NCBI GenBank assembly: GCA_024704765.1
Contig: JAKMXF010000040.1
Span: 1-58,311 of the forward strand
Source of the DNA: Oopsacas minuta
Taxonomy: Eukaryota > Animalia > Porifera
Reading direction: 5' to 3'
DNA: 58,311 nucleotides
Shown: in pieces, positions 14,549-57,204 of the stretch
How positions within the stretch are numbered: position 1 is the stretch's first letter
Layout of the letters: every line of letters begins with the position of its first letter
Program-made: the position numbers and the translations under genes
Notes under the pieces: model-generated
Told to the model about the DNA's origin: nothing
Databases searched by the model: none
Seen by the model: the letters and a program-made list of their open reading frames with translations, nothing else

Positions 14549-15421
14549 TCAAAATATATGTAGAAAGTTCACATTATGATGACACACTACTATAACTCTG
14601 TCATGATTGTCTACTGTTACTGCTGTTGGTTGCTCAGAGACTGGAATATGGTGAATTGATTGAAATTCTGGGTTGAAGATGGCAATAGAATTAGAGTTAT
14701 AATCAGCAATTAGAATGTTGTTAGAATTGTCAATAAAGAAAGATCGGGGATTAATGACCTGATTTCCTTTTCCTCGCGAAATTACACTCTTCAGGAGTAT
14801 GTGGTTATGATTGAATAGATGGATACAAGGATTTGATTTATCTGACACAATAATGTATTCATTAGAGAGTTTAACATCACTAGGGTATTTGAATGAACTT
14901 AATTGTGATTTGTATTTGAAATCTTGTGAGAGTATTTGAACTCGATTGTTATGATAATCACAAATGTAAATATCATCATTAGATTCATTGATTGCCATAC
15001 CCCAAGGAATGCCGAATTCTAATTCACCATTTCCCTGTTTACCAATTCTAGAAATAAGTTCACCATCAAGATTATAATTCAGTATACCATGGTAATGAGT
15101 AATTAGAATCCTACTCCTACAAATAACTAATCTTCTTGGATAGGTCATGTTTCCTTCTCCTGTACTATCACCAAATTTGAACATATACTTAGCAGTACTG
15201 TCAAATACTTTAACACAGTCATCAAAAGAATCTAATATATAAATATCCCCAGTTATGTCATCTACTGCAACACAATTTGGATACTTGAGTTCCTCATTTC
15301 CATTTCCTCCCTTACAAATACTCACTAGAGGTTGTATCTTACTCGAGTAGTCAATTCCAGTTCTCACTCTCTCTAAATTATCCTCAACAGATTCTAGTCC
15401 AATAGGATTAGATGTGGCCAT
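14549..15421 (-). CDS. NHL-repeat six-blade beta-propeller protein, subfamily A (NHL-1), 290 aa, intact
   Basis: Intact ORF. NHL blades CVAVDDITGDIYILD, PWGMAINESNDDIYICD and PTAVTVDNHDRVIV. Confidence 0.9.
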   Translation of the reverse strand: MATSNPIGLESVEDNLERVRTGIDYSSKIQPLVSICKGGNGNEELKYPNCVAVDDITGDIYILDSFDDCVKVFDSTAKYMFKFGDSTGEGNMTYPRRLVICRSRILITHYHGILNYNLDGELISRIGKQGNGELEFGIPWGMAINESNDDIYICDYHNNRVQILSQDFKYKSQLSSFKYPSDVKLSNEYIIVSDKSNPCIHLFNHNHILLKSVISRGKGNQVINPRSFFIDNSNNILIADYNSNSIAIFNPEFQSIHHIPVSEQPTAVTVDNHDRVIVVCHHNVNFLHIF

Positions 15422-17058
15422 TATTGCTAAATATTTATAGGAGTATGAATTAATACAAATAGTCAGTAGACATACATGTAGCTCATGGTCATATACGAAA
15501 AATTACTAGTGATAATAGTCGATGAAAATGGTATAACAGTTAAATGTAAAGTACGTATACTTCACAGATTCTTGTAATTGGTTGAATGTTACTCATTTGG
15601 GTTTGTTATAATGCACAGTGGACTTGTTACATGGAGTGCTAGCAGGGTGACCAGATGTCATCCTTTGGGAAGGTCAGTGCGTTGTAGCCTCGCTAATCCG
15701 AACAGCATAGTCCCAATTGCAAAATATATCGTTCTGGCTAGCGAAATTGAATAAAACTATACTATAGTCTCTAGGAGTACATTGCTTTGGAAGTAGTCAA
15801 TTGAAAGGCCTTCGAAGTATGTAATATTGCACAATTAGGGTTGTTGATGGTTCTTCAACTTCTAAGACCGGTTATCGTCTCTCTTCTAACTCAATACTTT
15901 GGTAATACCAGGGTATTATGATTCTAGTGATTGCAAGGTTTTAATTCAAAATATGACATCATAGGAAAATTCACTTATCGAAAATTCAATATTTGAATTT
16001 CTCTAATTTCGTATTTAATTCGAATAAATATTCACCAAATATGTTTATAAATCAATACGTCATCACGTCTTCATATGTTACTCCGATTATTTCATGAATG
16101 GATTTTTAGAAATATATTTTTAATGTACAAATTATAAATTGTGAAATCTTTGCTGTAATAAGCTATCTTTGAACTTAGATTATCTTAATTGTAAAGCAAA
16201 TGAACAAATCAATTATCCTAAAATCAACTAGGATATTACGTGTCTTTGTTACACAAAAAATGCAAACACTAAAGTGGTATAAATGAACTAATCATCGCAT
16301 AATTGCGCCTAAACTTGATGAAGATGACTGTTTGAACTTTTACATTAGTCTAAGTTGATTCCTTAGATGTCCTTACCCTGAAAAGGTTCAATTCAAAACA
16401 TTGAAGGAAAAATCTTTCTTTAATGAAACATATAAAATTTAACTCTTATCTTATTCTATGCATAATTTGGCAGCATTGTTCTGATTCAGTACCCGAATAT
16501 GATATATTTTGGATAGCCTGTGTCAAATTTAAGATTCCGGGAAATATTCACAGGTATTTGAGAACTGGGTTCACCACTAATCAGGGGTTCATGTCTGCAA
16601 TAGAATTGGATACAATTAAGTATTTTGGAAAAAGAATTTATGGAATTGGGGCAAAACAGTTGTGTATTCTAGCTTAAGAACAAACTAAGCTATAATTTGA
16701 TGCGATGAAATACCGACAAGAACAAGCGTTACTGCTATTCAAAGGTTCCCGCAGAGTAAAGATGGAGGTCCCAAATGCTTGAATATATTCATGGTTATAA
16801 TATAAATTATAAACATGAATAAATTATTGTTTGTTTGTTTATCTGTCTGTTCATTGTCAAAAGAAAGGAGTATTGATTTGCTACTATTAGATTGAATTAG
16901 CATTTCCAGATGTTACTTAGCAAAAACTCAGCACAGTGCCAAAACTGGGGTTCACAGAATCGTAAAACTAGATTTGCTGACTTGTAGTCTATTGGAGGGA
17001 TTAGTTTATGACATAACCGTCTCTCCGGGGGTGCTACATAATGAAAGTAACTACTCAC

Positions 17059-17215
17059 CTTTATCTAGAATTAAGACAATAAATATTTAGAAATATCTTT
17101 AGTAGAATAAAATATAATAATATTAACAGAAATATAAAATCAGAATAACATCAAGTTATATAATTACTGATATACATATAGTAATGTGATACTACTGTAT
17201 TCTCTTGTACATATT
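17059..17215 (-). repeat. Exon-like ~157-bp dispersed repeat, copy 1 (CAG| ... |GTGAGT)
   Basis: Shared with six other copies and flanked by canonical acceptor and donor on the minus strand. Confidence 0.8.
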
Positions 17216-20385: not shown

Positions 20386-20388
20386 GAA

Positions 20389-20835: not shown

Positions 20836-23800
20836 TTAGTCAGAAGAGTGCAATAGGTAGAATACAGCATTGAGTGACCCGATGAAAGTGTCGCAGTCCC
20901 AAAGTTGGATAATTGGTTTTCTCATTTCGTCATATTTGTAGAATTGCCCGTTTTGGTAAAGGATTGAATAGAAGTGTCTACTACTCAATATACTAAAGCC
21001 AGCAAGTTGGTAGTGAAGTGTCCGTTGGTTGTGACTGATGGTAAAGTGTTTGTCAATATCACCTACAAAAATGTCTGGCAATTCGGGTAGATGTCCGATT
21101 TCAATTGTTAGCATGACAGGTATTGACTTGAATTGACCAGATATCCTCTCTAAGACAGCAGTAGTTGATCCACAAGACTTGCATTTAATAGGAACGAGAC
21201 TTCGATTAACAGATGATTCCAGGTTTGTAATAACGCCTCCTATATTACTAATCATGGATTGTGTCTCAAAGATTGGTGCTTTGGTGGCATTGGAAGATAG
21301 TGAAATATTTGTCGTTGCACAAATCTTCTGTTCGTAAATATTTGATGATGTTACCCTCTGATCCAAAGAAATCGTAAGACCGTATCAATCCTGAGGAATC
21401 ATAAAAAACTTCAAGCCCAATTTTGTAGCAACATATTCTCGAAGTTTCTCAAATTCACAATTAGCAGCCAATTGGAATATGTAGTGGAATTTAGCTTCAA
21501 TATGTGTACTTCCGATTAACTTCAGTGAGTCTATGATGGTTGCTTTATTCGAACTAAGAATAGCCAATATACTGTCGATAGAACAGGTGTTAGATTGCAC
21601 GATGTTGTTATACTCTCCTCCATTTAGGATATGTATAAGATCTGATGTATTTTGTATAGATTGTTCTGGTATTTCAATGATCTCATGAACTTGCTCAGTT
21701 GGGAATATTAACTCAATTATTACTGGTAATAGAACAGCAATTGGATAGTCAAGATCTCTTCGCGTCTCTTCAGGTATTTCAGGAGGATAAGAGGAACGAT
21801 ATTCTGTGTACCAATTACCGGCTGATACAGCAAGTTTCTCCTTAATCTCAAAATTTAGTTCGTTGGGTGGATGGTAAGAATATAGTAAATTCAATGAAGT
21901 TAGAGATGCAGCTTTTGTAGCGAGTTTCTCATGTAGTTGGGTTAAGTAGGTGTTATTGATAAGGGCTGATAGTATTCGAGGTTTCAATTGAAGTAGCTCA
22001 GAGTCGATATTTTCATAGATTGAGTGTTGTTGCAGTGTTTCAAATGTTTCTTCCATGGTATCCAGGTTCAATATATCATCCAATGAATCTAAATACATAA
22101 TAAATATGTGAAATGTAGGATTGCCATTACGTATTAATCGAATCAATACAGAACACAACTAGTTTTCTATGTACGTAATCATGGGCTGAGCCAATTAGTT
22201 ATAGTTCAGTACAATATTGTCTCGCTAATATTTTTACCGCTAGGAGGGAATTTGCAAGATCTTTTGGGCTTCTTTGATTTGCCTGTCTTCGTTCGAACCT
22301 GCCTTTTTTTCGTTCATGCGAGAATGATATTTTCGTGATAGATGGATAGGTAGTTTTGTTGTTTTGCTATCTGGGTCTTTGCGAGCAACTAGGTGGCTTA
22401 GTTTAACTTTCTCTATCGTATATGGTCCCAAATATTTCCTTGCATCTTTTGTTCCTGGGAGTCGCTTGGCTTTCTTTATATTATGTACAAGTACTTCATC
22501 TCCTTTCCACAAATTCTGATCTAAAGTTAAAACAGTGATTATAATTATACAAAGAATTATAATCTGCCAATTACGTACAGTTTGTAATGATGCTAATTTT
22601 ATAACTAAAAGTAAGTGTTTTGGAATTCAAGAATTCATATAGTTGAGGAAACAATAAATTAGTTCCGATTTAAGATTATTTCATATTTACCTGATTATAC
22701 AACAGTCAGTTAATTCAATTTAATTTTAGTAAGAGATGATGTATGAAATTCCAACATGTTACATCACAACAAGAATGTGTTTCTTTATTACTTACCTGTT
22801 GTGTTTAACTTTGCTGTCATATGTTTTCTTTTGAACTTTCTGACCAGCCTTGATGTTTTCAATAGCAGTCATCCTGTCAGCTTTACGTGTGGAAGAAAGA
22901 TTTTCTATCCATTCGTTATCAATTATAGGAAAGTCGAATGAGCGTGGTTCGTTTGCATCCATTTGAATATTCTCATCTTCTGATACTTCTGCCTCTGAGA
23001 TATCAGCTTCGGTTAGTAATCTGGGGTTAGTTGGAGAAGTGATAAGATTGAGAAGGTTAGATGAATCAAAGTCTCTCCCAAACATGAGATAAAAGGGTGT
23101 GTAGCTTGTAGAGATTTTGGTTTGAGTATTTGCTGCTAGTACTGCTGTCTGTAATTTCTCTGTCCATTCAGTGTCCCATCAGATTGCATCTTGTTGATTT
23201 TTCTATTTGTAAAAAGTGTTAAATAGATTCAAAGCTATCTAATTATAAACGTATGTTAGGCTTATAATATATATACATTTATATTTAGCATCAATACTCA
23301 CGTTTTCAATATTTTGTTGTATGACTCAACAAGCCCGTTACTTTGTGGGTGGTATGCTGTGGTTCTTCTGGTGTTCACATTTATCTTCTTGTGAAATTCT
23401 TGAAATTCCTATTTTGAAAGTAAATAAGAGAACAATAACAATCTACTACACGCATGTATTTAGTTTTGTACAACAATAGTTAGAAAGATAAAACGATTAA
23501 TAAGGTATATTTTCCATCTGAAGGTAGTAGCATTAATTCGGAAATTCTTATTTATTAGTATTTAACATAAATTAAAATCCAATTTTCCACACGGTTTCTT
23601 AAATATAGCCATCAGGACGCACAATATCCTACCAGGGTATATAGTGAAGCAATGCGTTGACAATTGACAATGCAACTTGTTACGTACGTATATCCAATAT
23701 AGTAAGTTGTATTGTGTATCAGGAATAACTTACTTGGTGTATTTACAATTACTAATCTCGAGTATGTAAAAAATATGAGTTATCTTGCTTGAGAATTCTG

Positions 23801-25139
23801 TTCCCTGATCATGTTGGAGGATTTTAGGTACACCGAATGAGAGATAAATTACCTGTAAACAATCCAATATTTCTTTAGAAGTTTTAGTCTTGAGTGGTCG
23901 GGCAATTACAAATTTACTCAGGTAGCACACGATGACAAGAATGTGCTGAAATCCAAGTACAGTGCGAGACTTATTGCGTACAAGATCAATTCCACAATGA
24001 CACCATGGTTCTTCAGGAGGAGGAATAGGTTGAAGCTCTCGTTGTGGCTGAGGAGGTAGAGCAGCAGAGGTTTGACAGTCATGGCAAGTTCGGATCTAGA
24101 ACGGGAAATGAGTTAGTTGTCAGTTTGTAGTCCAGTCTAATGTAATTTGCCACGTCCCAGATGTCCCACTAAATTAGCATTCCGTCCCGCTTTTTCTTCA
24201 CTCAGGTTGGCAAATATATGTGAAATACTCCCACTACCTATCCCAATTACTAACTACCGCAAGGATCATTAGTTGTTAGTTACATGGTTGGTTGGTTGGT
24301 TGTACCGTACAAATAGATTTCCATATGATATAATTGTATACCCCGGTATACTAAATATCATCAGATCGCACAATATTAATTTTACAATCGCACAAATAAA
24401 GCTGTATACAGTAGAATAATTACAAGGTGAATAACCTCAAACTATAAAATACATTCTGTTCTCAGTCTTAACAACACCTTTTGCAAATTTCCCTAGATTT
24501 TCAAAATTTGTAATCCAGGGATCCCTGGAGGGTTGGTAAGTCTGTGTTCTCAGCCACATTTTCTTGGAAAATCACATATGAAAGAAATAAGTAATTTAGT
24601 AACTCACGTAGGATCCAACATCATTGTATATGCCATTCCAATCATATTTGTTTCGGATTCCATCAATGGTAGTGTTGAGTCCAGGATGAGTGACATTGTG
24701 ATAGAATCCGATAATGTTGTCAATTTCTGAGACTAGTGGAATCTCCAAGTATTTCACACAGCCATTTTTCTTTCTGAAAATCTACAAGAAAATTATTTTA
24801 GTTAAACTCAGAGGTTGTAGGTAGCATTGAGGGGCAGAGGAGCCCCCTAGCGTTTTCGCCCTTCTCATCTCCCTATGGTACGCAAATTTAATGAGACAAC
24901 TACATATCTGCCTCCTCGCAGATATGTAGTTACCTCAAGATTTCTAATTATGTCCCGAAATATGCATAAATCAAACATATCATTCAGGAATATACCTTCA
25001 TTAGCTTATTCTCTTGAAAGTAAATCCCCTAACACTTTCTGACAAAATTCTTCTTTCTGTAGCGATCACTCTTGATTTCTGGTGGGATAATATTCGTCTG
25101 GAGGTATCCACGAATTGCTTCATACTCTGTCGCATCCAT
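20836..25139 (-). mobile_element. Ginger-like intron-containing Gypsy-type integrase/transposase gene with a C-terminal USP-like protease (element A, decayed)
   Basis: Exons 25139-24996 (MDATEYEAIRGYL..), 24781-24608 (..YHNVTHPGLNTT..YDW..), 24095-23784 (IRTCHDCQ..GIDLV..HDQGTEF), 23408-23302 (TAYHPQSNGLVESYN), 23202-22796, ~22520-22240 (YLGPYTI) and ~22160-20836 (SNTCSIDS ... RHFYS..FYKYD). Contains a stop, frameshifts and one GT>AT donor. Confidence 0.85.
24898..24931. repeat. Perfect 14-bp hairpin in intron 1 of element A
   Basis: aactacatatctgc-ctcctc-gcagatatgtagtt. Confidence 0.85.
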
Positions 25140-25172
25140 AATGAAAAATGTCAAAAGTAAATATATTACATA

Positions 25173-26024
25173 TCAAAATATCTGTAGACAATTCACAGTA
25201 TGATAACACACTACTATAACTCTATCATGATTGTCTACTGTTACTGCTGTTGGTTGCTCAGAGACTGGAATATTATGAATTGATTGGAATTCAGGATTGA
25301 AGATAGAAATAGAATTAGAAGAATAATCAGCATATAGAATGTTGTTAGAATTGTCAATAAAGAAAGATTGGGGATCAATAACTTGATTTCCTTGTCCTCG
25401 TGAAATGATTCTCTTCTGGAGTATGTGGTTATGATTGAATAGATGGATACAAGGATTAGATGTATCTAGCACATAAATGTATTCTTTAGATAGTTTAACA
25501 TCACAAGGGTATTTGAATGAACCAAATTGTGATTCGAATTGGAAATCTTGTGAGAGTATTTGAATTCGATTGTTATTAGAATCACAAATGTAAATATCAT
25601 CATTAGATTCATTGATTGCTATACCCCAAGGAATGTCGAATTCCAACTCTCCTTTTCCATGTTTACCAATTCTAGAAATAAATTCACCATCAAGATTATA
25701 ATTCAGTATGTCGTGGTCATGAGTAATTAGAATCCTACTCCTACAAATAACTAAGCTTCTTGGACTGAACATCTTTCCTTCACCATTACTGTCACCAAAT
25801 TTGAATATATACTTAGCCGTACTGTCAAATACCTTAACACAATTATTAGAATAATCTACTATATATATATTTCCAGTCAATTTGTCAACTGCAACACAAA
25901 GTGGACTGTAAAGTTTATCATTTCCTTCACCTCTCTTACTAGAACACACCAGAGGTTGTATCTTGCTTGTGTAATCATTTCCAGTTTTCACTCTCTCCGT
26001 TTCAATAGTAATAGCTGTGGCCAT
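25173..26024 (-). CDS. NHL-repeat beta-propeller protein, subfamily B (NHL-2), 283 aa from ATG 26024, intact
   Basis: Homology to all paralogs starts at MATAITIETERV. The upstream in-frame extension in the ORF track is not conserved. Confidence 0.9.
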   Translation of the reverse strand: MATAITIETERVKTGNDYTSKIQPLVCSSKRGEGNDKLYSPLCVAVDKLTGNIYIVDYSNNCVKVFDSTAKYIFKFGDSNGEGKMFSPRSLVICRSRILITHDHDILNYNLDGEFISRIGKHGKGELEFDIPWGIAINESNDDIYICDSNNNRIQILSQDFQFESQFGSFKYPCDVKLSKEYIYVLDTSNPCIHLFNHNHILQKRIISRGQGNQVIDPQSFFIDNSNNILYADYSSNSISIFNPEFQSIHNIPVSEQPTAVTVDNHDRVIVVCYHTVNCLQIF

Positions 26025-26414
26025 TGTTGCTAAATGGATATAAGGGGTAGAATAGCTAAAATTAGCGCAGATTGGAGAATACAATAGTAACAGGAGATCT
26101 GTATACATGTGTGCGTATAGAAGGTTAGATTTCAGATTTGGTATACAGGTGGCATAATGTCTCAAAAATGGTTGGTTTCCCAATTCAGATAGAGCAGACA
26201 TATTAACTAGGTAGGACTCAGGACATGTTTGTCATATGAGGCATTTTGCCGATAGTAATCATCTGGTACAGTGCAACCCGGAAAATCCACCAAACAGATT
26301 ATTGCGGGTCAATTCTGTCCGTCTACCAATTCATATGCATAATAATACTAATGGCGTGTTCCGCCACCTACCATAGGTTATGTGAACCAATTACGTCATT
26401 AATTACACTCATTA

Positions 26415-27283: not shown

Positions 27284-27361
27284 ATGTTCGGAAGAGATGG
27301 CTTAGATTATGGTGTGGCTACAAGGAGCTGTAAAATCGAACAACAACATAGAATATTATCA

Positions 27362-28081: not shown

Positions 28082-28356
28082 ACAATCTTTCCTTCACCTA
28101 TACTGTCACTAAATTTGAATATATATCTAGCAGTACTGTAAAATACTTCAACACAGTTATTAAAACAATCTGCTATATACATATCTCCAGTTATGTCATC
28201 AACTGCAACACAACCGGGATAGGTAAGTTCATCATTTCTATTTCCTCTCTTACTAGCACTCACCAGAGGTTGTATCCTCCTTGTGTAATCAATTACAGTT
28301 CTCACACTCTCTGGATAATCAACAGGTTCTGGTTCATTAGGATTAGCTGTGGCTAT
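28082..28356 (-). pseudogene. NHL subfamily A 5' fragment (NHL-3)
   Basis: Start codon ATG>ATA at 28356 and upstream AG lost. Reads ATANPNEPEPVDYPESVRTVIDY..GEGKI, then homology stops. Confidence 0.85.
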
Positions 28357-33900: not shown

Positions 33901-34418
33901 TAACTTCTGTTATTATTATTCGGTTCCAATACTTTTCTTTTTTGAAAGATTTCCATCCTTCATTAACCAATCACGGCTGTGAAAGGTAATTCCTTCCACA
34001 AATATTTCCGAGAATGCTATATGATAGTTAAACTCCCAAAATATTACTTACGACGATAATACATCTCAGTGTCTTGAATTACTGAAATACAGGCTATCAA
34101 GAAGTTTATTATGTATACTGTTAACGGCCAACACAAATTTATCCCTAAAGCGAAGTAATAGTATGTGTATTAAAGAAGTCCGTGACAATACTGAGGTAAA
34201 TTCTCGTAGTATAACCACATGTCATAGAAAATTATAGGAAATTGACAGCTGGTATCAATCTCGGTATTGATCTGACAAATTTCGGTTAGATTATCGATGG
34301 ATGAATTTTGGGCGAACTGCTTCATATGACATACATGTTTACATATCTCCTGCTATATTGTATCCCACAATCTGAGCTCATTTCAGGTATACTAACTCTT
34401 TCTATCAATTTAGCAACA

Positions 34419-34601
34419 ATGGCCACAGCTATTACTATTGAAACAGAGAGAGTGGAAACTGGAAATGATTACACCAGCAAGATGAAACCTCTAGTATGTG
34501 CTACTAAGAGAGGAAAAGGAAATGATAAACTTTACTGTCCACTTGGTGTCACTGTTGACAAGATGACTGGAGATATTTATATAGTAGATTCTTTGAATAA
34601 C
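34419..34601 (+). pseudogene. NHL subfamily B 5' fragment (NHL-4)
   Basis: MATAITIETERVETGNDYTSK..IYIVDSLNN, then homology ends. Confidence 0.85.
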
Positions 34602-34666
34602 ATTTCGTTTTCCTCCTTTCGTATGTGCAATTTCCATTTTGATTTCATTAGTTAGTATTTTGCCTA

Positions 34667-36938: not shown

Positions 36939-37810
36939 TCAAAATATCTGTAGACAGTTCACGTTATGATTACACACTACTATAACTCTATCATGATTGT
37001 CTACTGTTACTGCAAATGGATGCTCAGAGATTGGAATATGGTCAATTGATTGGAATTCAGGATTGAAGATAGAAATAGATTTAGAAAAATAATCAGCAAT
37101 TAGAATGTTGTTAGAATTGTCAATAAAGAATGATTTGGGATTAATGACTTGATTTCCTTGTCCTAATGAAATTACACTCTTCAGGAGTATGTGGTTATGA
37201 TTGAATAGATGGATACAAGGATTAGATTTATCTGACACATAAATGTATTCATTAGAGAGTTTAACATCATGAGGGTATTTGAATGAACCAAATTGTGATT
37301 TGAATTGGAAATCTTGTGAGAGTATTTGAACACGATTGTTGATAGAATCACAAATGTAAATATCATTATTAGATTCATTGATTGCTATACCCCAAGGATA
37401 GTTGAATTCTAATTTTCCTTTTCCCTGTTTACCAATTCTAGAAATATATTCACCATCAAGAGAATATTTCAATATACCGTGGCCCTGAGTAATTAGAATC
37501 CTATTCTACAAATAGCCAAACTTCTTGGATAGTACATCTTTCCTTCACCTCTTCTGTCACCAAATTTGAACATATAATTAGCAGTACTGTCAAATACTTT
37601 AACACAGAGATTGTAACAATCTAATACATAAATATCTCCAGTTTTGTCATCTAATGCGACACAACTTAGCCATTTAAGTTCAGCATTTCCATTATCTTTC
37701 TTACAAACACTCACTAGAGGTTGTATCTTGCTTGTGTAGTCAATTCCAGTTCTCACTCTCTGTAAATTATTCTTAACAGGTTCTGGTTCAATAGGATTAG
37801 ATGTGGCCAT
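36939..37810 (-). pseudogene. NHL subfamily A gene (NHL-5), full length with one 1-nt deletion near 37505
   Basis: ORFs 37493-37810 and 36939-37472 join into a 290-aa paralog if one base is restored (TGT AGA A-T AGG versus TGT AGG AGT AGG). Confidence 0.85.
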
Positions 37811-39555: not shown

Positions 39556-39928
39556 TAAACTTGTAAAGATAACTGCAATTCTTCATTATCAAAGAGCATA
39601 TAATAAATGGTGGCCAGGATAGTATTTTGGCGATTCTTTGCTTAGCTAGCCGTATATATAGTAGGCCATGGGCGGGCCTTCTCCTATAGTTACCCTACCC
39701 TGCCCTACATCTGGGCAACCATGGGGGTGCACGTGCCACTTGTGCCCTATGCAAGGCACGTGCATGGGTTCACTGCTGGATCCTGGAAACGAAACTGATC
39801 TCACCCTGATAGGAGCCAGTGTTAAGCTAGGAGGTTGGAAATATTTCAAAAATGGTTCGAAATCTGTATTAGTTTATTGTATGGCAACCTCTCCAAGGGT
39901 CTAACACGTAATGAAAGAAGCTACTCAC

Positions 39929-40043
39929 ATTTATCTTGAATTAAGACAATAAATATTGAGAAATATCTTTAATAGAATAAAATATAATAATAGTAACAGA
40001 AATTAAGAAATCTGAATATCATCAAGTTATATAATTACTGATA
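39929..40043 (-). repeat. Exon-like dispersed repeat, copy 4 (cut off by the insertion at 40044)
   Basis: Donor GTGAGT retained. Homology ends abruptly at ..ataattactgata|gggattac. Confidence 0.8.
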
Positions 40044-41040
40044 GGGATTACTTATATGTCGGCGCTCTACATTGTCGGCTAGCCGACAAATAAGGAATTA
40101 CACGATATATAAGGATTTACTCGACATATAAGGATACGGACTATATAAGGATTTACCCGACATATAAGGATACGGACTATATAAGGATTTATAAGGAACA
40201 TATAATGATTATTATAAGGAATGTTATATTGCTACACTAGAGAAAGTATCCATAACTAATACACTGTGACAACGTACCAAATTTTCATTTGTATTTATCT
40301 GTATTCCTTTTCTTCGTCCTAACATCGTTAAAGCTCCGTTTTCTTTTATTAGAAGCGCGCCCTTTGGATCGAACACGTCTAGGATTTAGGATTGTTGCGA
40401 TACTTAGAATAATTGCTCCACTTTCCTGTGGTATAGGTCTTAGCAATTGGTCCATTTCGGATAATTTACCTCTCATAACCGAAAAAGTTGAATGGTCAAA
40501 TGATGCAAGATGAGCAATGTGTTTAAATTCTGTTGTTAGCATGTTATACCTTTCGTCTTTCGTTAGGATAGGATTATTTTGATAATCATTTTCTTGTAAT
40601 TCTATTACATTGTGACTACCAATACAGCTGTAGATATTAGAATTGTGATCTGCTTGATTCTCTATCTATTATGAGACTATATATTAATAGTTGAAAGAAC
40701 ACAAGGACACAGCGTTAATAATTTGGCGAGTCATTACGTAATTCTGATATAACCGAGTGTGATTGCAAAAGTATCTGTGCTGTATCGAATGGCTGCTTAA
40801 TTTCCAGAAATCGACTATATCTTTGTCGTGTATATTCGTTACTTTCTCGTGATGATAAACGATAAGCATGTGACGACATGGTAAACCCCATGATGATGGG
40901 AATAAGCATGTGAAAGATATCAAAGTTGTCTTACGGCTGGACTTAGCAAAAACCTTCGATAACCCGAGGTCCATAGATGTTAATTTCTCCTTGTTGGTAC
41001 GTTCCGACAATCCTTCTCTTTCAACTAGAATACAGACAAA
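40044..41040 (-). mobile_element. MULE transposase 3' fragment (SWIM zinc finger) with terminal and subterminal repeats
   Basis: TCLFPSSWGLPCRHML (SWIM CxC..CxH, first Cys lost) and a basic tail NPRRVRSKGR. Tandem atataagga repeats at about 40105-40200. Confidence 0.7.
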
Positions 41041-41366
41041 ATACGTATTTGAATTAGCATAAATTATTATACGTACACTCGAACCTCTTATCTGGACTCC
41101 GATATCCGGGCACCTCCCTCAACCGGGCACCATTTTTCCAAAAGGATTGAAATTGATTCGGCCATTTTCTAATTTCAGTAAATATTCCTTATAGTAGAGC
41201 TGTTTTACTCGTACTTCATATCTAACACGTTTCTTTGTAACTAAAAACCATCATAACAGCTATATCCGTCCATATCGATAGAAATAGTAATGGAAGATGA
41301 AAGGAATAAATAAACAAAGAAAGAATTTAAATGACAAACAGAAATACAAATACATAGAGTTACATA

Positions 41367-42239
41367 TCAAAATATCAGTAGACTGTTCACAGTATGATTA
41401 CATACTACTATAACTCTACCATGATTGTCTACTGTTACTGCTGTTGGATCCTCAGAGACTGGAATATTATGAATTGATTGGAGTTCAGGATTGAGGATAA
41501 AAATAGAATTAGAATCATGATCAGCAATTAGAATGTTGCTAGAATTGTCAACAAAGAATGATTTGAGATTAATGACTTGATTCACTTGTTCAAGTGAAAT
41601 TACACTCTTCAGGAGTATGTGGTTATGATTGAATAGATGGATACAAGGATTAGATAAATCTAACACATAAATGTATTCTTTAGATAGTTTAACATCATGA
41701 GGGAATGTGAATGAACCAAATTGTGATTTGAATTGGAAATCTTGTGAGAGTATTTGAACTCGATTGTTAATAGAATCACAAATGTAAATATCATCATTAG
41801 ATTCATTGATTGCTATACCATAAGGATAGTTGAATTCTAACTCTCCATTTCCCTGTTTACCAATTCTAGAAATATATTTACCATCAAGGGTATAATTCAG
41901 TATACCGTGGTTATGAGTAATTAGAATCCTAAATCTACAAGTCATTAAGCGGTTTGGACTTGACATCTTTCCTTCACCATTACTGTCACCAAATTTGAAT
42001 ATATACCTAGCAGTGCTGTCAAATACTTTAATACAGTTATTCAAACAATCTAATATATAAATATCTCCAGTTTTGTCATCTAATGCGACACAACTTAGCC
42101 ATATAGGTTCAACATTTCCATTATCTTTCTTACAAACACTCACTAGAGGTTGTATCTTGCTTGTGTAGTCAATTCCAGTTCTCACTCTCTGTAAATTATT
42201 CTTAACAGGTTCTGGTTCAATAGGATTAGATGTGGCCAT
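41367..42239 (-). CDS. NHL-repeat beta-propeller protein, subfamily A (NHL-6), 290 aa, intact
   Basis: Intact ORF, paralogous to NHL-1. Confidence 0.9.
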   Translation of the reverse strand: MATSNPIEPEPVKNNLQRVRTGIDYTSKIQPLVSVCKKDNGNVEPIWLSCVALDDKTGDIYILDCLNNCIKVFDSTARYIFKFGDSNGEGKMSSPNRLMTCRFRILITHNHGILNYTLDGKYISRIGKQGNGELEFNYPYGIAINESNDDIYICDSINNRVQILSQDFQFKSQFGSFTFPHDVKLSKEYIYVLDLSNPCIHLFNHNHILLKSVISLEQVNQVINLKSFFVDNSSNILIADHDSNSIFILNPELQSIHNIPVSEDPTAVTVDNHGRVIVVCNHTVNSLLIF

Positions 42240-44083
42240 TATTGCTAAATATTTATTAGAGCAAGAATTAATACAAATAGAAATTGTCAGTAGACATACC
42301 TATAGTGTAGCTCATGGTCATTTCGCACATGATTAGTGAATCGTATTAGCTACATAATCTTATACAAACATTCCTGTCTCCAATCTTGAGCTATCTTTTA
42401 TCCTTAGACTATGAGTATATCTACTTTGATAATACAATTAATCTTAGGACATTTAAGATGGTGGATTGTACTTAGACATATACCACCATTAATCTAGGTA
42501 TTGGCAAACTTTCGGGATCGTCTTATTTTCCGGTGCTATAACTGTGAAAGTATAACACCTTTCTTTAATGAAACCACAAGTGATAATATACCAAACTCAG
42601 ACTTATGCCATGTAAATATATTACTTGTTTCCTAATTAATTATGATAATCCAGGTTCAATCCGGTCAGGGATGAATTCTTAAACCGTTCCATCACTAGCG
42701 GTACTGATCTACAAATATATTCTAACATATAATCCAATAATGAAAATCTGTGTACGTAATTGATTTTGGGTTGGAGTAATTTGAGGGATATTTTATCCTC
42801 CAAAAATGCATTTTATAATAACAAATAACTTGTATATAGCTCAGCTATACTATAGTACAGATTTAGGTATTAGCTTTGATATCTTCGAGGAAAAGTCATT
42901 ATTCGGGGTTAATGAAAGTCACATTTTAGAATGAGGGTATGCGGTTAGTATTGCAAAAAACTGCACTATAATATAGCTCTTCTATATATAAGGAATCTCT
43001 TATAATACGTATTACTGTAACTTCGGGCTATAGCTTACTATAAACACACTGCTAGCTAAGCAAAGAATTGCCAAAATAATTTCCTAGCAATTGATAATGG
43101 TAAACGGAACTTTCGTCTCAGGAAATTTGGTATCCTTTAGCTGTTTTAGTAATCTTTCTTTTGTTTTTAGAAAAGAAAAGAAGATGGATAATGTTGCAAA
43201 AGATCGATAGAATAGGTAGAAGGTTACAAAAAGGTGGTAGAAAGGGCGGAATGTATAAGATAGGACGAGACCATCACGGATATTTCTTAGATTAGCTAGC
43301 AAAAGGTTATACGAAGGGTTGATCGGGGATTTTAATGCTAGACTAGATTCTGATGAATGTTTTGTTCTGATTAGCTACATAATGGTCTGGGGTGGGAGAT
43401 ATGTGTTTTATATAAAGGAGAAGATGATGGCTATGTTTCGAACTGTCATTAATGTTGCTAAAGTCGATTGTAAGGTGTGGGATATTTGGGAAAATGGGAT
43501 CAGGAATTTTTTTTCGAATTTTTAGCGGAATAAGTAGTCTCTTTGTTTTATAGAAAAAGAAAAACAAGATAGGTAATGTTGCAAAGATCGATATAATTGG
43601 TAAAAGCGTACGAAAATTCCAGAGACTATGTCATTGTGGTTAAAATAACCTGAAAAGCAGGTACAAAATTTTTGTAGATATCTCCGCCATATGTAGAAGC
43701 CTATATTTAAAAGAATTTTTAATGATAACTACAATTCTTCATTATCAAAGAGAATATAATAAATGGTGGCCAGGATAGTATTTTGGCGATTCTTTGCTTA
43801 GCTAGCCGTGTATATAGTAGGCCATGGGCGGACCTTCTCCTATAGTTACCCCATCCTGCCCTACACCTAGGCAACCATGGGGTGCACGTGCCACTTGTGC
43901 TCTATGCAAGGCACGTGCATGGGTTCACTGCTGGATCCTGGAAACAAAACTGATCTTACCCTGATAGGAGTCAGTGTTAAGCTAGGAGGGTGGAAATATT
44001 TCAAAAATGGTTCGAGAGTTGCATTAGTTTATTGTATGGCAGCCTCTTCAAGGGTCTAACACGTAATGAAAGAAACTACTCAC

Positions 44084-46068: not shown

Positions 46069-48756
46069 ATAGAACATGGAGAACCGTTGTACGTTCATGC
46101 GATGAGGGAGAAAGGGTTTTAGAATCTTGCCATTCCAGTGACTTTGGTGAGTATATTAGTAATTCATTTACAACAATGTAATAGAACTATAATTTCTTCC
46201 ATAGAAGTAATTTCTTTTACAGTTTAAAATTATCTAGGTGGACATTTTGGGCGAGACAAAACGTACGAAAAAGTTGCAGCCCGTTTTTACTGGCCTAATA
46301 TGTACAATGATGTACGTAAATATGTTGCAGCTTGCGACATTTGTCAGAGAGTGAATGAATCTGGAAATTTTATAAAGGCTAAAGCTCCCTTACATCCGAT
46401 AAAAGTTGATCCAGAGGTATGGAAAATGGTACGTTCTTCTGTCGATTTTCATTCGCACCGTTCTAATTTTACATCGATGTCTTTTTAACTTTTATAGGTG
46501 GGAGTTGATTTGATTGGACCACTTACAATGACACCAAGAGGTAATAAATACATTATTACCATGGTTGATTACTTCTCAAAGTGGCCAGAAGCAGATGCAT
46601 TACCAGATAAGAGTGCTAAAGGTGTTGCTCTCTTTCTTTATAAGACTATGTGCCGGTTTGGATGCACTCAGGTAGTTATCAGCGATCAGGGTAGAGAATT
46701 CGTTAACAAAGTGAATCAAGAGCTATTTGATCTAACTAAAACAACTCATAGAATTTCTACCGCCTACCACCCTCAAACAAATGGTTTAGTTGAGCGATTT
46801 AACCAGACCATTCAACGCGCTCTCCTAAAGCTTGTAATAAAAGAACAAGATAATTGGGATATGTACATTGATGGAGTTCTATTTGCATATAGAACATCTG
46901 TACAAAAGACAACAAAAAAATCGCCTTTCGAAATAATGTACCTTCGGTGAGATATTTGTAACTGTTCTATGCTAGAATTTTTAACTCGATTACATTCTAC
47001 AGTGAAGCTATCCTGCCGATTGAGATGGATTTTATGCCTGAATATCTAAATATCCCTGCGGACCCTAACATAGATGCATTTATTTGCCAGATGAATAACA
47101 TAAAGAAGTCGCTTTATGGAAAGGTTGATAAGAATATCCAGGAGGGACAGGAAAAACAGAAGAATGAGTATGATAAAAAACAAAAGCAATCTAAAGTAAG
47201 TCTTCTTAAGAATTATTTAGTATTTACATACCAGTTTATATGTTTTGCTCTAGAATTTTAAACCAGGTACACTAGTTCTCCTTCGAAATAGTGCTAAGGA
47301 TGGAAGAAAGGGTGATAAATTTCGAATGCGGTATCTTGGACCATATGAAATTTTTCAAGATATTGGGAAGGGAGTTTACAAGCTTCGCAATTGTGTAACC
47401 GGAATTCTCCTCAAAAAAACTCAGAATATCTCCCGTCTAAAGTTGTACTGCAAGAAGAAATTTCAAATCAGATCGAATCATGTATCAGGCTACAGATATT
47501 CAAAACAAAGAGCGATGCAAACTGGAATTGTAGAGTCTGAAAACGAACTGTGTGAGAAGGAACCGAAAGAAGAACTTGTCATTTCTGTTGACAGAAAAGA
47601 CAACGTAAGTAATCATTCTATATAAATTTAGGACAATCAACGCAAACAATTCAACCTCAATAATCATGGTTGATACAAAATGGTTTGTGTAGCTTCTCTT
47701 TAGTTTAAAATTTTCATTCTGAACTCTAAATCGAGAAATTATCCGTTAGAATATACACAATTTCATAAAATCACCTGATAGTCCCCCTTACACGAATAAA
47801 TTCTACCTTCTTTAATAGGAGTCAATAAACGGTACAATATCTTCAAGTCCTCCATCACCATCTCCATTCTGGGTGCACAATCTGTATCTCAGCCCAACTG
47901 ATGAGCTAGAAATACTAAATGGACTTTGGCTGACAGATAAACACATTGTTGCGGCTCAAAAATTGTTGAAAAACCAGCACCCACTTACAAATGGGCTTGA
48001 AGATCCCCTCATGCTTGCAGAAAAGCTTTCATATAAATCAACTTCAATCTCATTTGTCCAGATTGTCAACTTAGGTAGGACACACTGGGTCTGTGTCTCA
48101 AGCTTTAATTGTCTACCTGGAATTGTGGATGTTTATGATAGCATTCCAGCATGTTCTCTGGGTTCGTTATCTTTGAGAAAACAAGTGGCCTCAATAATTA
48201 AAGCAACTGAACGCAGTTTTGAACTACATTTTGTTGAAACTCAAAGACAATCAGGGGGAACAGATTGTGGACTATTTTCTATAGCCTTTGCTACAGCACT
48301 ATGCCAAGGCATTGACCCTCATACGTGCTCCTTTGATCAAACTCAGATGAGGATACATCTGCACAGCTGTCTAGAACAATTGAACATGACTCTGTTCCCT
48401 TCTTCAAAAAAGCCACGTCGAAAGTGCACGAAGAGATGGCAGAGAAAGATCGTAGTAGCAAACTGAGTAGAAATATTTGAATTTGAAATAGGTTTCACTA
48501 GTACAATACAAAGGTATTTAGAAAGTAGATAATATCTTTGGATAAATCCGCACTAGTGCCAGAGGTCCGCTGGGGGACATCTGACCCAAAGTGGGGACTA
48601 CTTACCCTAGTGTCAGAGGTCCGGGGGGACACTCCACACTAGTGCCATTCGTCGGCGGGACTCCTTGCCCTAGTGTCACTAGTCCGGGGGACATTTGGCC
48701 CTAGTGCCACTAGTCCGGGGGGACAGAATTTAGGGAGGACACATGACACTACCACA
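46069..48756 (+). mobile_element. Ginger1-like DNA transposon (element B): spliced integrase + GPY/F + Ulp1/C48-like protease, with right terminus
   Basis: Exons 46069-46146, 46238-46428, 46498-46946, 47003-47195, 47254-47604 and 47819-48466 splice in frame with no stop. H2C2 (CH..GHFG..CDIC), DDE (GVDL, SDQG, VERF), protease (THWVC, VYDS, QSGGTDCGLF). GC-rich ~31-bp subterminal repeats at 48550-48725. Ends ..CCACA|CCGG. Confidence 0.88.
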
Positions 48757-49092
48757 CCGGAACTCTGTGCCCGTAAGGGTTCAGTAGTTCCTGGATCAAG
48801 AGTCTCAGGCTCTGCCATCGCTAATTACTCTAGCTACCAGGTAATGTGAATTGAAAACCGATAATTATGATTAAAGTAAACAAAAACAAATACAAAATGA
48901 ATAAAAACTAAAATAGATAAACCATAAATTGATGAAAATATCCCACAATCATTTTGTATTTGTTTTTGTTTACTTTAATCATAATTATCGGTTTTCAATT
49001 CACATTACCTGGTAGCTAGAGTAATTAGCGATGGCAGAGCCTGAGACTCTTGATCCAGGAACTACTGAACCCTTACGGGCACAGAGTTCCGG
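48757..49092. repeat. Perfect 144-bp inverted repeat with a 48-bp spacer, bounded by CCGG at both outer ends
   Basis: 48757-48900 is the exact reverse complement of 48949-49092. Confidence 0.95.
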
Positions 49093-49278: not shown

Positions 49279-49951
49279 GTATGCCCTTCTTTTGATTATT
49301 CCTTTACCGCACATATCTGTCCATTAGTCGTTTTAATCTTGGTTGGGCTTTTCTCTCATTCAATGATTAGTGTCGATCATATCTCAATATCCACAACGAC
49401 ACACAAATTCTGTATTCCCTTAGCAAGATTTTGTATCACAAATTTTGTAATATCATTGTGTTTTTCTATACAATAAAAATACATTTTCAATGTCTTGCAT
49501 TAGTGGAATACGGGCGATCAAGAAGTATAATATGTATACTGTATTCTGTCTACGCTAACAACATCGTAAAACGAAGTAGAAAGTCTGTATTTAAGAAGTC
49601 CGTGACATTCATGAGGTAAAATTCTCGGAATATTGCCATATGGAATAACAATGATCAGAAATTGACAGCTGGGATCAATTTCAGGATTGATCTGACAGGA
49701 TCCGGATATATTATCGAAGGGAGTTATTTCGGCGAACACACTCTGAAGGAAAAAATCTCATAAGTCCTAATAAACATACCTACACTATCTGAATGAGGCA
49801 ACTAACCATTTTGAGACATTATGCCACCTGTATACAATTCTGAAATCAAACATTCTATACACCCACATGTGTATACATCTCCTGCTACTATAGTATTATA
49901 CAATCTTAGCTCATTTCAGGTATACTAACTCTTTATATCTATTTAGCAAAA

Positions 49952-50803
49952 ATGGCCGCAGCTATTACTATTGAAACGGAGAGAGTGGAAACTGGAATTG
50001 ATTACACAAGCAAGATAGAACCTCTGGTATGTTCTAGTAAGAGAGGTGAAGGAAATGATGAACTTTCCCGTCCACTTTATGTTGCAGTTGACAAGATGAC
50101 TGGAAATATATATATAGTAGATTATTCCAATAATTGCGTTAAGGTATTTGACAGTACTGCTAAGTATATATTCAAATTTGGTGACAGTAATGGTGAAGGA
50201 AAGATGTCCGATCCAATAAGCTTAGTTATTTGTAGGAGTAGGATTCTAATTACTCATGACTACAGTATACTGAATTATAACCTTGATGGTAAATATATTT
50301 CTAGAATTGGTGAATATGGAAGTGGAGAATTAGAATTCAACTTTCCTTGGGGTATAGCAATCAATGAATCTAATGATGATATTTACATTTGTGATTATCA
50401 TAACCATCGAATTCAAATACTCTCACAAGATTTCCAATTCAAAACACAATTTGGTTCATTCACATTCCCTCTCGATGTCAAGCTCTCTAAAGAATGCATT
50501 TATGTGTTAGATGGATCTAATCCTTGCATCCATCTATTCAATCATAACCACATACTCCAGAAGAGTGTAGTTTCATTAGGACAAGGATATCAAGTTATTG
50601 ATCCCTTCTCTTTCTTTATTGACAATTTTAACAACATTCTAATTGCTGATTATTCTTCTAATTCTATTTCTATCTTCAATTCTGAATTCCAATCAATTCA
50701 TAATATTCCAGTCTCTAAGCAACCAACAGCAGTAACTGTAGACAATCATGATAGAGTTATAGTAGTGTGTTATCATACTGTGAATTGGCTACAGATATTT
50801 TGA
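49952..50803 (+). CDS. NHL-repeat beta-propeller protein, subfamily B (NHL-7), 283 aa, intact
   Basis: Intact ORF, closest to NHL-2. Confidence 0.9.
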   Translation: MAAAITIETERVETGIDYTSKIEPLVCSSKRGEGNDELSRPLYVAVDKMTGNIYIVDYSNNCVKVFDSTAKYIFKFGDSNGEGKMSDPISLVICRSRILITHDYSILNYNLDGKYISRIGEYGSGELEFNFPWGIAINESNDDIYICDYHNHRIQILSQDFQFKTQFGSFTFPLDVKLSKECIYVLDGSNPCIHLFNHNHILQKSVVSLGQGYQVIDPFSFFIDNFNNILIADYSSNSISIFNSEFQSIHNIPVSKQPTAVTVDNHDRVIVVCYHTVNWLQIF

Positions 50804-54647: not shown

Positions 54648-54725
54648 CAGTGGCGGATCCAGGAATCTCTGGTGGGGGGGATATCAACCCAGCTGGGGGT
54701 CTGGGGGGCGCTGTAAGCCCCTGGC
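54648..54725 (+). mobile_element. GC-rich MITE terminal fragment (CAGTGGCGGATCCAGG..ggggtctggggggcgctgtaagcccc)
   Basis: Typical PIF/Harbinger-like MITE terminus. No partner end seen. Confidence 0.45.
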
Positions 54726-56317
54726 CACCCAACTAACTGCAATTTCATGTGTATTTTATTCTATTCTCACTGATTGAAGGTCTTTCCTATATTCCACTTG
54801 TATCCAGTTTAGATTACTACATTTAATCTATATCATCTAATAGCGCATGCACGTANCTTTTGTAGCTGCTTAATTGCAGGAGTTCATAGCTTGATAGTGT
54901 GGTAGTAAGTTTGTTACCACACAGGATGATTATTTAGGGCGCACAAACTTATTTGATGTTTCACTTACAATTTACGATTGTTTGGTAGCTTCATAACTTC
55001 TGCTGCCTACTTGAGAGGTACACAACTACTAAAGCCATCAACTCGTAGCACTACAAATCAAACCTATGCAAGGATTTTATTATCTGATAATTTGAGTTTT
55101 CATTTCTACTCGACATTTCGAACATTGAATATATTTAATCTATTTTGGAAAATATGGAAACTAAATGCTATGACATAATAGAAATTACATCTTATATTGT
55201 ATAATTCATTGAATAATTCATAATGAGTCAACTGAGATCAAACAATTGATATTCTAGTAATCTGTATGCGTTACTATAGTTAGAATAGATTGGAATGTTT
55301 CAATAAATTTGTGTGCTTAGTACAAATCTAATAGAGACTAGACTCAAACAAGATAGTTTTCAAACCTAAATATCTCAAATGATTTTGACTATTTTAACAT
55401 AATATTTTATACACATAAACATTCATACAGCAGGAATACATGCCCATGATTTCAAGAAAACTTAATATGTTTAAGTATACTAAATCCATAAGTGAACTAC
55501 TGCTGGTTAGATGCACCAATTTCTAATAGAAAAATATACATTCATTCCAGATACGTCTGTATCTCTTCTTTCGAATTGTCAAAGATATTTACATTCTGAC
55601 CATGGGAAGTTAGTCTAATTAATGAGTGAAGTACTGCTGGTCGAATATTCAGCCAACTTCACGCTCATTGAAAAGTAATATACTTGTTTCTCATCCCAGC
55701 CAGTCCCAAACTTTGTCCCCTGAGCTGAATGATTTTATTTGTATTTCTTCCAAATTTATACATAATTCTTTAGTCATAGAGTGTGCAATCCACATTTTAC
55801 TAGTTGTATAGTTGAAAACTTAGAATGTGATAAGATAATCAAAGGATGAAATATTTGATATATTAACTGACCTTTAAAAATATATTTAAAATACCGCCCG
55901 CTGTCCAAGTTTCTGAAGAAATTCCGGATGGGAAACAAGTAATATACTTACATGGCCTAAATCTGAGTTTGAGTATTATTCATTTGTAGTTTCATTATAT
56001 AAAGGTGTTGTACTTTCACAGCTGTAGCACGGGGAAATATGACGATCCTGAAAAAAATGCCAAAAAACTAGACCCTCGGCGGTATATCTCTAGGTACGGC
56101 TGACCACGAATTTACATGTCTTGAAATTATCTGTGTTGATAAAATAGATATGCTTATATTCTAAAGACAAGAGATAACTCAGGATTGGAAATAGGAAGAT
56201 TATGTGGCTAATACGATTCACTAATCATGTGGTAGATGACCATGAGCTATACTATAGGTATATCTACTGACAATGTCTATTTGTATGAATTCTTACTCCA
56301 ATAAATAATTAGCAATA

Positions 56318-57204
56318 ATGGCCACATCTAATCCTATTGAACCAGAACCTGTTGAAGATAATTTAGGGAGAGTGAGAACTGGAATTGATTACTCGAGCAA
56401 GATACAACCTCTAATGAGTGTTTGTAAGAAAGAAAATGGAAATGATGAACTCAAATGGCCGCAAGGTGTTACAGTAGATGACAAAACTGGAGATATTTAT
56501 ATGGCGGATTGTTTTAATGACTGTGTGAAAGTATTTGACAGCACTGCTAGGTATATGTTCAAATTTGGTGACAGTAGAGGTGAAGAAAATATGTACCATC
56601 CACGAAGCTTGGTTATTTATAAGAGTAGGATTCTAATTACTCATGACCACGGTATATTGAATTATAATCTTAATGGTGAATTTATTTCTAGAATTGGTAA
56701 ATATGGAAATGGAGAGTTAGAATTCAAATATCCTAAGGCGATAGCAATCAATGAATCTAATGATGATATTTACATTTGTGATTATTTTAACAAACGAGTT
56801 CAAATACTCTCACAAGATTTCCAATTCAAATCTCAATTTGGTTCACTCAAACGCCCTCTTGATGTTAAACTATCAAAAGAATACATTTATGTGTTAGATG
56901 AATCTAATCCTTGTATCCATCTATTCAATCATAACTACATACTCCTGAATAGTGTATAAGAGACAGCTATGTTTCACTAGGACAAGGAAATCAAGTCATT
57001 ACTCCTCGATCATTCTTTATTGACAATTCTAACAACTTTCTAATTGCTGATTATTCTTCTAACACTATTTCTATCTTCAATCCTGAATTCCAATCAATTC
57101 ACCATATTCCAATCTCTAAGCATCCAATATCAGTAACAGTAGACAATCATTATAGAGTTATAGTAGTGTGTGAGCATGCTGTGAACTGTCTACAGCTATT
57201 TTGA
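56318..57204 (+). CDS. NHL-repeat beta-propeller protein, subfamily A (NHL-9), interrupted by a 14-nt insertion that overlaps an adapter sequence
   Basis: Removing taagagacagctat (56957-56970) restores ..LNSV-VSLGQGNQVITPRSFFID.. through to TGA at 57202-57204. Confidence 0.8.
56952..56966 (+). other. Tn5 mosaic-end / Nextera adapter remnant (probable assembly artefact)
   Basis: GTGTATAAGAGACAG is the 3' 15 nt of AGATGTGTATAAGAGACAG. Confidence 0.8.

What the first reader, a model, noticed from the sequence alone, without database searches (positions are those of the whole stretch)
14549..57204. Array of stand-alone NHL propellers whose variation concentrates on one face: candidate diversified recognition system
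Seen: nine intronless 283-290 aa paralogs or fragments with nearly invariant strands (VKVFDST, AINESN-DIYICD, QILSQDF, NPCIHLFNHN). The xxPx residues opening each blade vary strongly across NHL-1/2/5/6/7/9. Blade 1: KYPN, YSPL, KWLS, IWLS, SRPL, KWPQ. Blade 2: TYPR, FSPR, YYPR, SSPN, SDPI, YHPR. Blade 3: GIPW, DIPW, NYPW, NYPY, NFPW, KYPK. Blade 4: KYPS, KYPC, KYPH, TFPH, TFPL, KRPL. Blade 5: NPR, DPQ, NPK, NLK, DPF, TPR. The residues after the blade Asp also vary (DSFD, DYSN, DCYN, DCLN, DCFN; CDYH, CDSN, CDSI, CDYF). Established: these loops form the top ligand/RNA-binding face in Brat and LIN-41 NHL domains. Inference: a cytosolic receptor repertoire (no signal peptide, no RING/B-box) under birth-and-death and possibly diversifying selection, for example against viral, symbiont or transposon ligands.
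Basis: partly seen in the sequence, partly recalled or inferred. Interest (0 to 1): 0.75.

Follow-up and report, generated by a model that had tools for sequence, protein, structure and literature searches.

The report
Glass-sponge NHL propellers with fast-changing face
The glass sponge Oopsacas minuta has a cluster of small ring-shaped (NHL propeller) protein genes with a nearly fixed frame, while about 30 residues on the partner-binding face change faster than silent DNA sites, which is the pattern of an inherited set of binding proteins whose targets are unknown.

Summary
The window is an Oopsacas minuta contig. It holds nine NHL copies: four intact (283 or 290 aa), two full-length but frameshifted, and three fragments. 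A distant coiled-coil-NHL gene lies at 9211-10410.

An AlphaFold model (pLDDT 89.6) is a six-bladed TRIM-type NHL propeller. Variation sits in the d-a and b-c loops, which define the top face.

I tested 16 intact paralogs (4 from the window, 12 from other contigs).
- Thirty positions defined by motif, five per blade, give dN/dS 3.5 (p=1.6e-7 against 1) with a normal silent rate.
- The rest of the propeller gives 0.49 and the bottom loops 0.41.

The propeller-only form is one clade. It arose from the about 409-aa coiled-coil-NHL family by an in-frame deletion of about 117 codons, flanked by GTGAGA repeats.

The top face is not positively charged, so RNA binding like Brat is not favoured. Expression could not be tested because no RNA runs were available. 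Ligands are unknown.

This scan already reported the same hypervariable family on other DNA of this genome. I found no published description.

The parts
14549..15421 (-). NHL copy 1, intact, 290 aa, propeller-only
   Evidence: ORF; Pfam NHL E=1e-19; AlphaFold six-bladed propeller, pLDDT 89.6
25173..26024 (-). NHL copy 2, intact, 283 aa. The ORF runs on upstream to 26201, but homology and the conserved start are at 26024
28084..28356 (-). NHL copy 3, fragment covering residues 1-92, 63% identity
   Evidence: tblastn
34446..34601 (+). NHL copy 4, fragment covering residues 17-68
   Evidence: tblastn; ORF 34308-34655
36939..37810 (-). NHL copy 5, full-length pseudogene with one base lost near codon 103 (872 nt)
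   Evidence: The public gene model P0019 skips the break with an artificial intron
41367..42239 (-). NHL copy 6, intact, 290 aa
49952..50803 (+). NHL copy 7, intact, 283 aa
53839..53978 (+). NHL copy 8, small fragment covering residues 17-63
   Evidence: tblastn
56318..57204 (+). NHL copy 9, full-length pseudogene with 14 extra bases after codon 213 (887 nt)
9211..10410 (+). Distant relative (26% identity), 399 aa, coiled coil plus NHL propeller. No RING or B-box ORF lies upstream
20836..25139 (-). Transposon-derived ORFs between copies (context)
Evidence: ORFs; no Pfam match for these two ORFs. I did not check it further
46069..48760 (+). Transposon with integrase core and Ulp1-like protease ORFs between copies (context)

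Best explanation
These genes are a propeller-only branch of a large coiled-coil-NHL family of glass sponges.

Shown:
- Each protein is a rigid six-bladed NHL propeller.
- About five positions per blade change by amino-acid replacement faster than silent sites. They are the two residues before and the one after the conserved Pro that opens strand a, and the two residues after strand b. By strand topology all lie in top-face loops.
- The strands, the remaining loop residues and the bottom loops are under purifying selection.
- The branch arose once, by an in-frame deletion of the coiled coil, and then multiplied to about 20 annotated copies on at least seven contigs.
- Copies are lost through frameshifts and truncation, and the array is full of transposon-derived sequence.

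Inferred:
- The top face binds diverse partners, so the family is a germline-encoded set of binders. The partners are more likely proteins or other non-RNA ligands, because the face is rich in Ser, Tyr, His, Asn and Trp and is not basic.
- The conserved acidic bottom face may dock a common partner.
- Without the coiled coil the short forms would be monomers. They may act as soluble binders, decoys or competitors of their coiled-coil relatives.
For: - Identity and fold: Pfam NHL. AlphaFold model with pLDDT 89.6, pTM 0.87 and 24 strands. Foldseek TM 0.83-0.86 to the Thin, Lin41/TRIM71 and TRIM2/3 NHL domains and 0.72-0.75 to Brat. Profile hits to the same chains, E=4e-62 to 2e-30.
- Definition of the top face: PMC4015489.
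- Selection by structural class: b-c loops 2.0 (p=0.02), d-a loops 0.89, strands 0.56, bottom loops 0.41.
- Selection at the 30 motif-defined sites: omega 3.5, LRT p=1.6e-7, relative silent rate 0.9. Other top-loop residues give 0.54 and the rest of the propeller 0.49.
- Site-mixture tests: LRT 168. With silent-rate variation the LRT is 62, and with a separate tree per third of the gene it is 7.4, 26.3 and 40.5.
The tree-free Nei-Gojobori ratio is 2.7, bootstrap 95% interval 1.46-6.35.
- The same positions vary in the 409-aa family: 22 of its 30 most variable positions are in the motif set (consensus).
- Origin: the short forms are one clade (support 0.999), sister to the O. minuta 409-aa genes. 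DNA alignment shows about 351 nt lost in frame, with GTGAGA at both edges in the long genes.
- Birth and death.
Against: - No RNA data were available, so transcription of any copy is unproven.
- No ligand or partner is known.
- Whole-gene omega is high (0.73-0.8), so some copies may be drifting.
- The d-a loops as a whole class are not above 1.
- Paralogs show mosaic similarity, for example L002_10001 and L005_7436, so a single tree is only an approximation. The first third of the gene gives a weak signal (LRT 7.4) once silent-rate variation and its own tree are allowed.
Confidence: 0.65

Rival explanations
1. They are RNA-binding regulators like Brat, LIN-41/TRIM71 or NHL-2, and the top face has diversified to read different RNA motifs, for instance transposon or viral RNAs.
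For: The closest solved folds are RNA-binding TRIM-NHL domains, including RNA complexes 6FQ3, 8J72 and 4ZLR. Those domains bind RNA on the same face. Several paralogs carry Arg, Lys, Tyr and His at the variable sites, with a net charge at the 30 sites of up to +7.
Against: The net charge of all top loops is -9 to +4 and negative in most paralogs, and the whole proteins are acidic. A positively charged top face is what distinguishes RNA-binding NHL domains. No effector part (RING, B-box or coiled coil) remains.
Confidence: 0.15
2. They are functionless leftovers. After losing the coiled coil the copies drift towards pseudogenes, and the loops vary simply because loops tolerate change.
For: Five of the nine copies here are dead. 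Whole-gene omega is 0.73-0.8. CDS identity is similar to the identity of the flanks. There is no expression evidence.
Against: Neutral drift gives omega near 1 everywhere. Here the scaffold is at 0.49 (p=1e-12 below 1), the bottom loops at 0.41, and the 30 top sites at 3.5 (p=1.6e-7 above 1). At least 16 ORFs of 283-290 codons stay open at a silent divergence of about 0.18.
Confidence: 0.08
3. The signal of positive selection is an artefact of gene conversion among paralogs, or of a local mutation hot spot.
For: Mosaic pairs exist. Divergence is uneven along the gene in 26 of 120 pairs. Site models can be misled by recombination.
Against: Segment-specific trees keep the signal in two of the three thirds. 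The silent rate at the 30 sites is 0.9 of the gene average, so there is no hot spot.
Confidence: 0.05

Closest known systems
TRIM-NHL proteins (Drosophila Thin/TRIM32, Brat and Mei-P26; LIN-41/TRIM71; TRIM2/3; C. elegans NHL-2)
   Same: Homologous six-bladed NHL propeller: profile E=4e-62 to 2e-30 and TM 0.83-0.86 to Thin, Lin41/TRIM71 and TRIM2/3, 0.72-0.75 to Brat. The working surface of those proteins is the same top face.
   Different: No RING, B-box, filamin or coiled coil. About 20 young paralogs instead of one conserved gene per type. The top face is not basic. The contact positions are under positive rather than purifying selection.
The about 409-aa coiled-coil-NHL family of O. minuta and of an unidentified ENA assembly (ERZ25766962)
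   Same: About 60% identity. Coding region without interruption, tandem copies among transposons, and the same hypervariable positions.
   Different: The window's genes lack residues 19-135, the coiled coil, through one in-frame deletion. Short ENA entries are gene calls that start at internal Met codons, not this deleted form.
Podospora anserina NWD/HNWD genes (het-e, het-d, het-r): WD40 propellers in fungal non-self recognition
   Same: A multigene family with a beta-propeller whose interaction-surface positions are hypervariable under positive diversifying selection (PMC1805685 and PMC2873952, listed; details from my own knowledge).
   Different: A different propeller family (WD40, not NHL). 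The fungal proteins carry NACHT and death-effector domains and diversify by repeat shuffling within a gene. Here whole single-domain genes duplicate.
TRIM5alpha and fish finTRIM B30.2/SPRY families
   Same: Expanded intracellular TRIM-derived families with positive selection in the loops of the C-terminal recognition domain (my own knowledge, not tested here).
   Different: The recognition domain is SPRY, not NHL, and the RING/B-box/coiled-coil effector part is retained.

Membership tests
NHL-repeat beta-propeller (Pfam PF01436) | Match to the NHL repeat profile above the curated cut-off | tested here: met
   59.5-78 bits against a cut-off of 20 for all four intact copies
NHL-repeat beta-propeller (Pfam PF01436) | Six blades of four antiparallel strands, closed by an N-terminal strand | tested here: met
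   AlphaFold gives 24 strands, and strand 33-38 completes blade 6. TM 0.83-0.86 to solved NHL domains
TRIM-NHL (RBCC-NHL) proteins | RING, B-box and coiled coil N-terminal to the propeller | tested here: not met
   Only 32 residues precede the propeller, with no such Pfam match. The coiled coil is deleted relative to the 409-aa relatives
TRIM-NHL (RBCC-NHL) proteins | Positively charged top face suited to RNA | tested here: inconclusive
   A residue count gives a net top-loop charge of -9 to +4.
Diversified recognition repertoire (as in fungal NWD propellers or TRIM5/finTRIM) | Multigene family with gain and loss of copies | tested here: met
   About 20 annotated short copies on at least seven contigs. 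Five of nine are dead in the window
Diversified recognition repertoire (as in fungal NWD propellers or TRIM5/finTRIM) | Hypervariable positions cluster on the binding surface | tested here: met
   with the face defined by strand topology
Diversified recognition repertoire (as in fungal NWD propellers or TRIM5/finTRIM) | dN/dS above 1 at those positions | tested here: met
   Omega 3.5, p=1.6e-7. Out-of-sample 7.2 and 2.7
Diversified recognition repertoire (as in fungal NWD propellers or TRIM5/finTRIM) | Genes are expressed | not testable with these tools
   No RNA run is on record. The four runs found are DNA-like contigs of one sample
Diversified recognition repertoire (as in fungal NWD propellers or TRIM5/finTRIM) | Demonstrated binding of varied ligands and a downstream response | not testable with these tools
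   Needs bench work

The most novel reading that the evidence does not exclude
Glass sponges use the NHL propeller as the variable module of an inherited intracellular recognition system for non-self, allorecognition, symbionts or viruses. Coiled-coil forms act as oligomeric sensors. The propeller-only forms in this window act as monomeric decoys or competitors. Other family members may be wired to cell death: an earlier, unchecked note of this scan reports caspase-NHL fusions in the same genome.
Probability: 0.3. Interest if true: 0.85.

Novelty: new variant of a known kind. Interest (0 to 1): 0.66.

Why it matters
Sponges lack antibodies and are known for expanded innate receptor families such as NLR and SRCR. 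An NHL propeller used as a diversifying binding scaffold has not been described in the papers I could search.

If the family is expressed and binds varied targets, it would be a new kind of germline-encoded recognition repertoire in an early-branching animal. It would also be a small, stable, single-domain scaffold with about 30 naturally tolerant contact positions.

The propeller-only branch gives a natural experiment on what the coiled coil contributes.

Tried and rejected
- Ancestral-state counting (SLAC type) was planned, but iqtree2 on this machine declines ancestral sequences. I did not try another route. I used likelihood tests that sum over ancestors and pairwise counts instead.
- The first mixture run failed numerically at omega=0 and was repeated with a floor. 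One iqtree call failed on the thread count.
- RNA evidence: the single run search found only four runs of one sample with no RNA label. Laid on 36800-42400, they cover genes and spacers alike as short contigs, so they say nothing about expression.
- Retrocopy origin: I saw no poly(A) tract where homology ends, 25-60 nt after the stop, so I do not favour it.
- Homology between copies covers the coding part plus about 70-800 nt upstream only.
- A RING or B-box exon upstream of the 399-aa gene at 9211: none among the ORFs of 4000-9211.
- Uneven divergence by thirds of the gene mostly reflects the more divergent first third, so it is a poor recombination test.
- Residue-by-residue mapping onto the RNA-contact residues of Brat or Lin41 was not done. 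The HMMER alignments are out of register between blades and model coordinates cannot be exported.
- The large representative-protein search was not used, because family placement was already clear.
Full report
**What the window is.** The best protein matches are annotated proteins of the glass sponge Oopsacas minuta, assembly GCA_024704765.1, and one match sits on a contig of exactly this window's length. GC content is about 33%. Neighbouring ORFs are eukaryotic: a G-alpha fragment, a mitochondrial carrier and transposon ORFs.

**Checking the observation.**
- Four copies are intact: 14549-15421, 25173-26024, 41367-42239 and 49952-50803.
- Copy 5 (36939-37810) has lost one base near codon 103. 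Copy 9 (56318-57204) has 14 extra bases after codon 213.
- Three copies are fragments of 47-92 codons.
- All full-length copies match Pfam NHL above threshold.

**Fold.**
- An AlphaFold model of copy 1, built on a 98-sequence alignment, has pLDDT 89.6 and pTM 0.87. It shows 24 strands, that is, six blades of four strands. Strand 33-38 serves as the last strand of blade 6, and residues 1-20 are disordered.
- Foldseek places it with the NHL domains of Thin/TRIM32, Lin41/TRIM71 and TRIM2/3 (TM 0.83-0.86, rmsd about 2 A) and, less closely, Brat (TM 0.72-0.75). A profile search of PDB sequences agrees.
- By definition the b-c and d-a loops form the top face and the a-b and c-d loops the bottom. In Brat the top face binds RNA (PMC4015489).

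**More sequences.** I fetched seven other loci of the same assembly and extracted 12 further intact genes. The 16 coding sequences align without gaps, apart from a 7-codon difference between the 290- and 283-aa types.

**Where the variation lies.**
- Mean column entropy is 1.02 bits (d-a loops) and 1.18 (b-c loops), against 0.49 (strands), 0.45 (a-b loops) and 0.27 (c-d loops).
- The few variable 'strand' positions are mostly the first residues of strand a, at the top edge.

**Is it selection?**
- Pairwise Nei-Gojobori ratios are 1.19 for top loops, 0.64 for strands and 0.35 for bottom loops.
- I wrote a codon-likelihood model (F3x4 frequencies, fixed iqtree topology). It gives 2.0 for b-c loops (p=0.02 against 1), 0.89 for d-a loops, 0.56 for strands and 0.41 for bottom loops.
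- A free mixture over a grid of omega values fits far better than one capped at 1 (LRT 168). About 9% of sites sit at omega 4 or more.
- Allowing the silent rate to vary leaves an LRT of 62. Giving each third of the gene its own tree gives 7.4, 26.3 and 40.5.
- I then defined 30 sites by motif alone, in all six blades: Pro-2, Pro-1 and Pro+1 at the start of strand a, and the two residues after strand b. These give omega 3.5 (p=1.6e-7) with a relative silent rate of 0.9, so there is no mutation hot spot.
- The other 52 top-loop residues give 0.54, and the rest of the propeller 0.49.
In the 12 genes from other contigs they give omega 7.2 (p=1.4e-5) and a tree-free ratio of 2.7 (bootstrap interval 1.46-6.35).
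- Sites with posterior 0.95 or more are 27 of 78 in top loops against 2 of 52 in bottom loops (p=2.3e-5).

**Origin of the propeller-only form.**
- The next relatives are hundreds of proteins of about 409 aa, at about 60% identity. Two are in O. minuta (P0021 and P0022) and the rest in the unidentified ENA assembly ERZ25766962. They carry a coiled coil before the propeller.
- In a tree rooted on the 399-aa gene of this window, the 18 short proteins form one clade (support 0.999), sister to the two O. minuta 409-aa genes (0.93).
- At DNA level, short nt 1-54 match long nt 1-54, and short nt 55 onward match long nt 406 onward. About 351 nt (117 codons) are missing in frame.
- The hexamer GTGAGA stands at both edges of the missing part in the long gene.
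- The 283-aa type lacks a further 7 codons.
- Short ENA entries are gene calls from internal Met codons, not this form.
- The same positions are the variable ones in the long family: 22 of its 30 most variable positions are in the motif set ('x' positions of the consensus). The variable face is therefore older than the deletion.

**Gene turnover.**
- Homology between copies covers the coding part plus about 70-800 nt upstream and 25-60 nt downstream. I saw no poly(A) tract at that point.
- Window copies are often closer to copies on other contigs than to their neighbours.
- Partial copies occur in other loci as well.
- Transposon ORFs separate the copies.

**What the face looks like.**
- The 30 sites are rich in Ser (14%), Tyr (14%), His (10%), Asn, Thr and Trp.
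- Net charge of the top loops is -9 to +4. The bottom loops are always acidic, at -5 to -11.
- This argues against a general RNA-binding role like Brat, whose top face is basic. It fits protein or other ligands better. This is inference.

**Limits.**
- Expression is untested.
- Recombination among paralogs is likely. It was handled only by segment trees and pairwise counts.
- The face was assigned from strand topology, not from measured geometry.

**Relation to earlier work.**
- Full-text searches found no paper on this family.
- NHL orthogroup expansion is mentioned in passing for merulinid corals (PMC11639872).
- The nearest analogue in logic is the Podospora NWD WD40 family (PMC1805685).
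- This scan has already reported the hypervariable NHL family on several other pieces of this genome, and one first-stage note proposes the coiled-coil deletion. My tests on independent data from this window agree with those notes.

Noticed in passing
window 9211-10410 (+): A 399-aa coiled-coil plus NHL gene only 26% identical to the array copies, with no RING or B-box ORF upstream. It is a second, older branch of RING-less NHL proteins beside the array.
   Followed up: partly
window 15422-15510, 26025-26110, 37811-37900, 42240-42330, 49860-49951, 56230-56317: About 90 nt before the start codon are conserved among copies. All six full-length copies share TTTAGCAA, one variable base, then AATG. 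This could be a short leader or a splice acceptor for an upstream non-coding exon.
   Followed up: no
window 20836-26024 and 36939-37810: Two public gene models look wrong. P0010 joins copy 2 to a downstream integrase. P0019 removes the frameshift of copy 5 with an artificial intron.
   Followed up: partly
window 1325-2248 (+); L005:11297-16300: A mitochondrial-carrier gene lies next to NHL copies both here and on contig JAKMXF010000111. This may be a trace of a larger duplicated block.
   Followed up: no
L004:14930-17062; L008:4087-4917: ORFs with a weak RAG1 RNase-H-like match (Transib-type transposase?) sit beside NHL copies in O. minuta and in the ENA assembly.
   Followed up: no
L008 (ENA ERZ25766962, contig ctg16898_69x_l): An unidentified assembly holds hundreds of 409-aa relatives in tandem among reverse-transcriptase and integrase ORFs.
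   Followed up: partly
L002:10001-10873 versus L005:7436-8305: These two paralogs are nearly identical over the first half and diverge in the second half, which suggests gene conversion or recombination between copies on one contig.
   Followed up: partly
window 390-728 (-): An ORF fragment that reads like a G-protein alpha subunit by eye. It is probably one exon of a larger gene at the window's edge.
   Followed up: no
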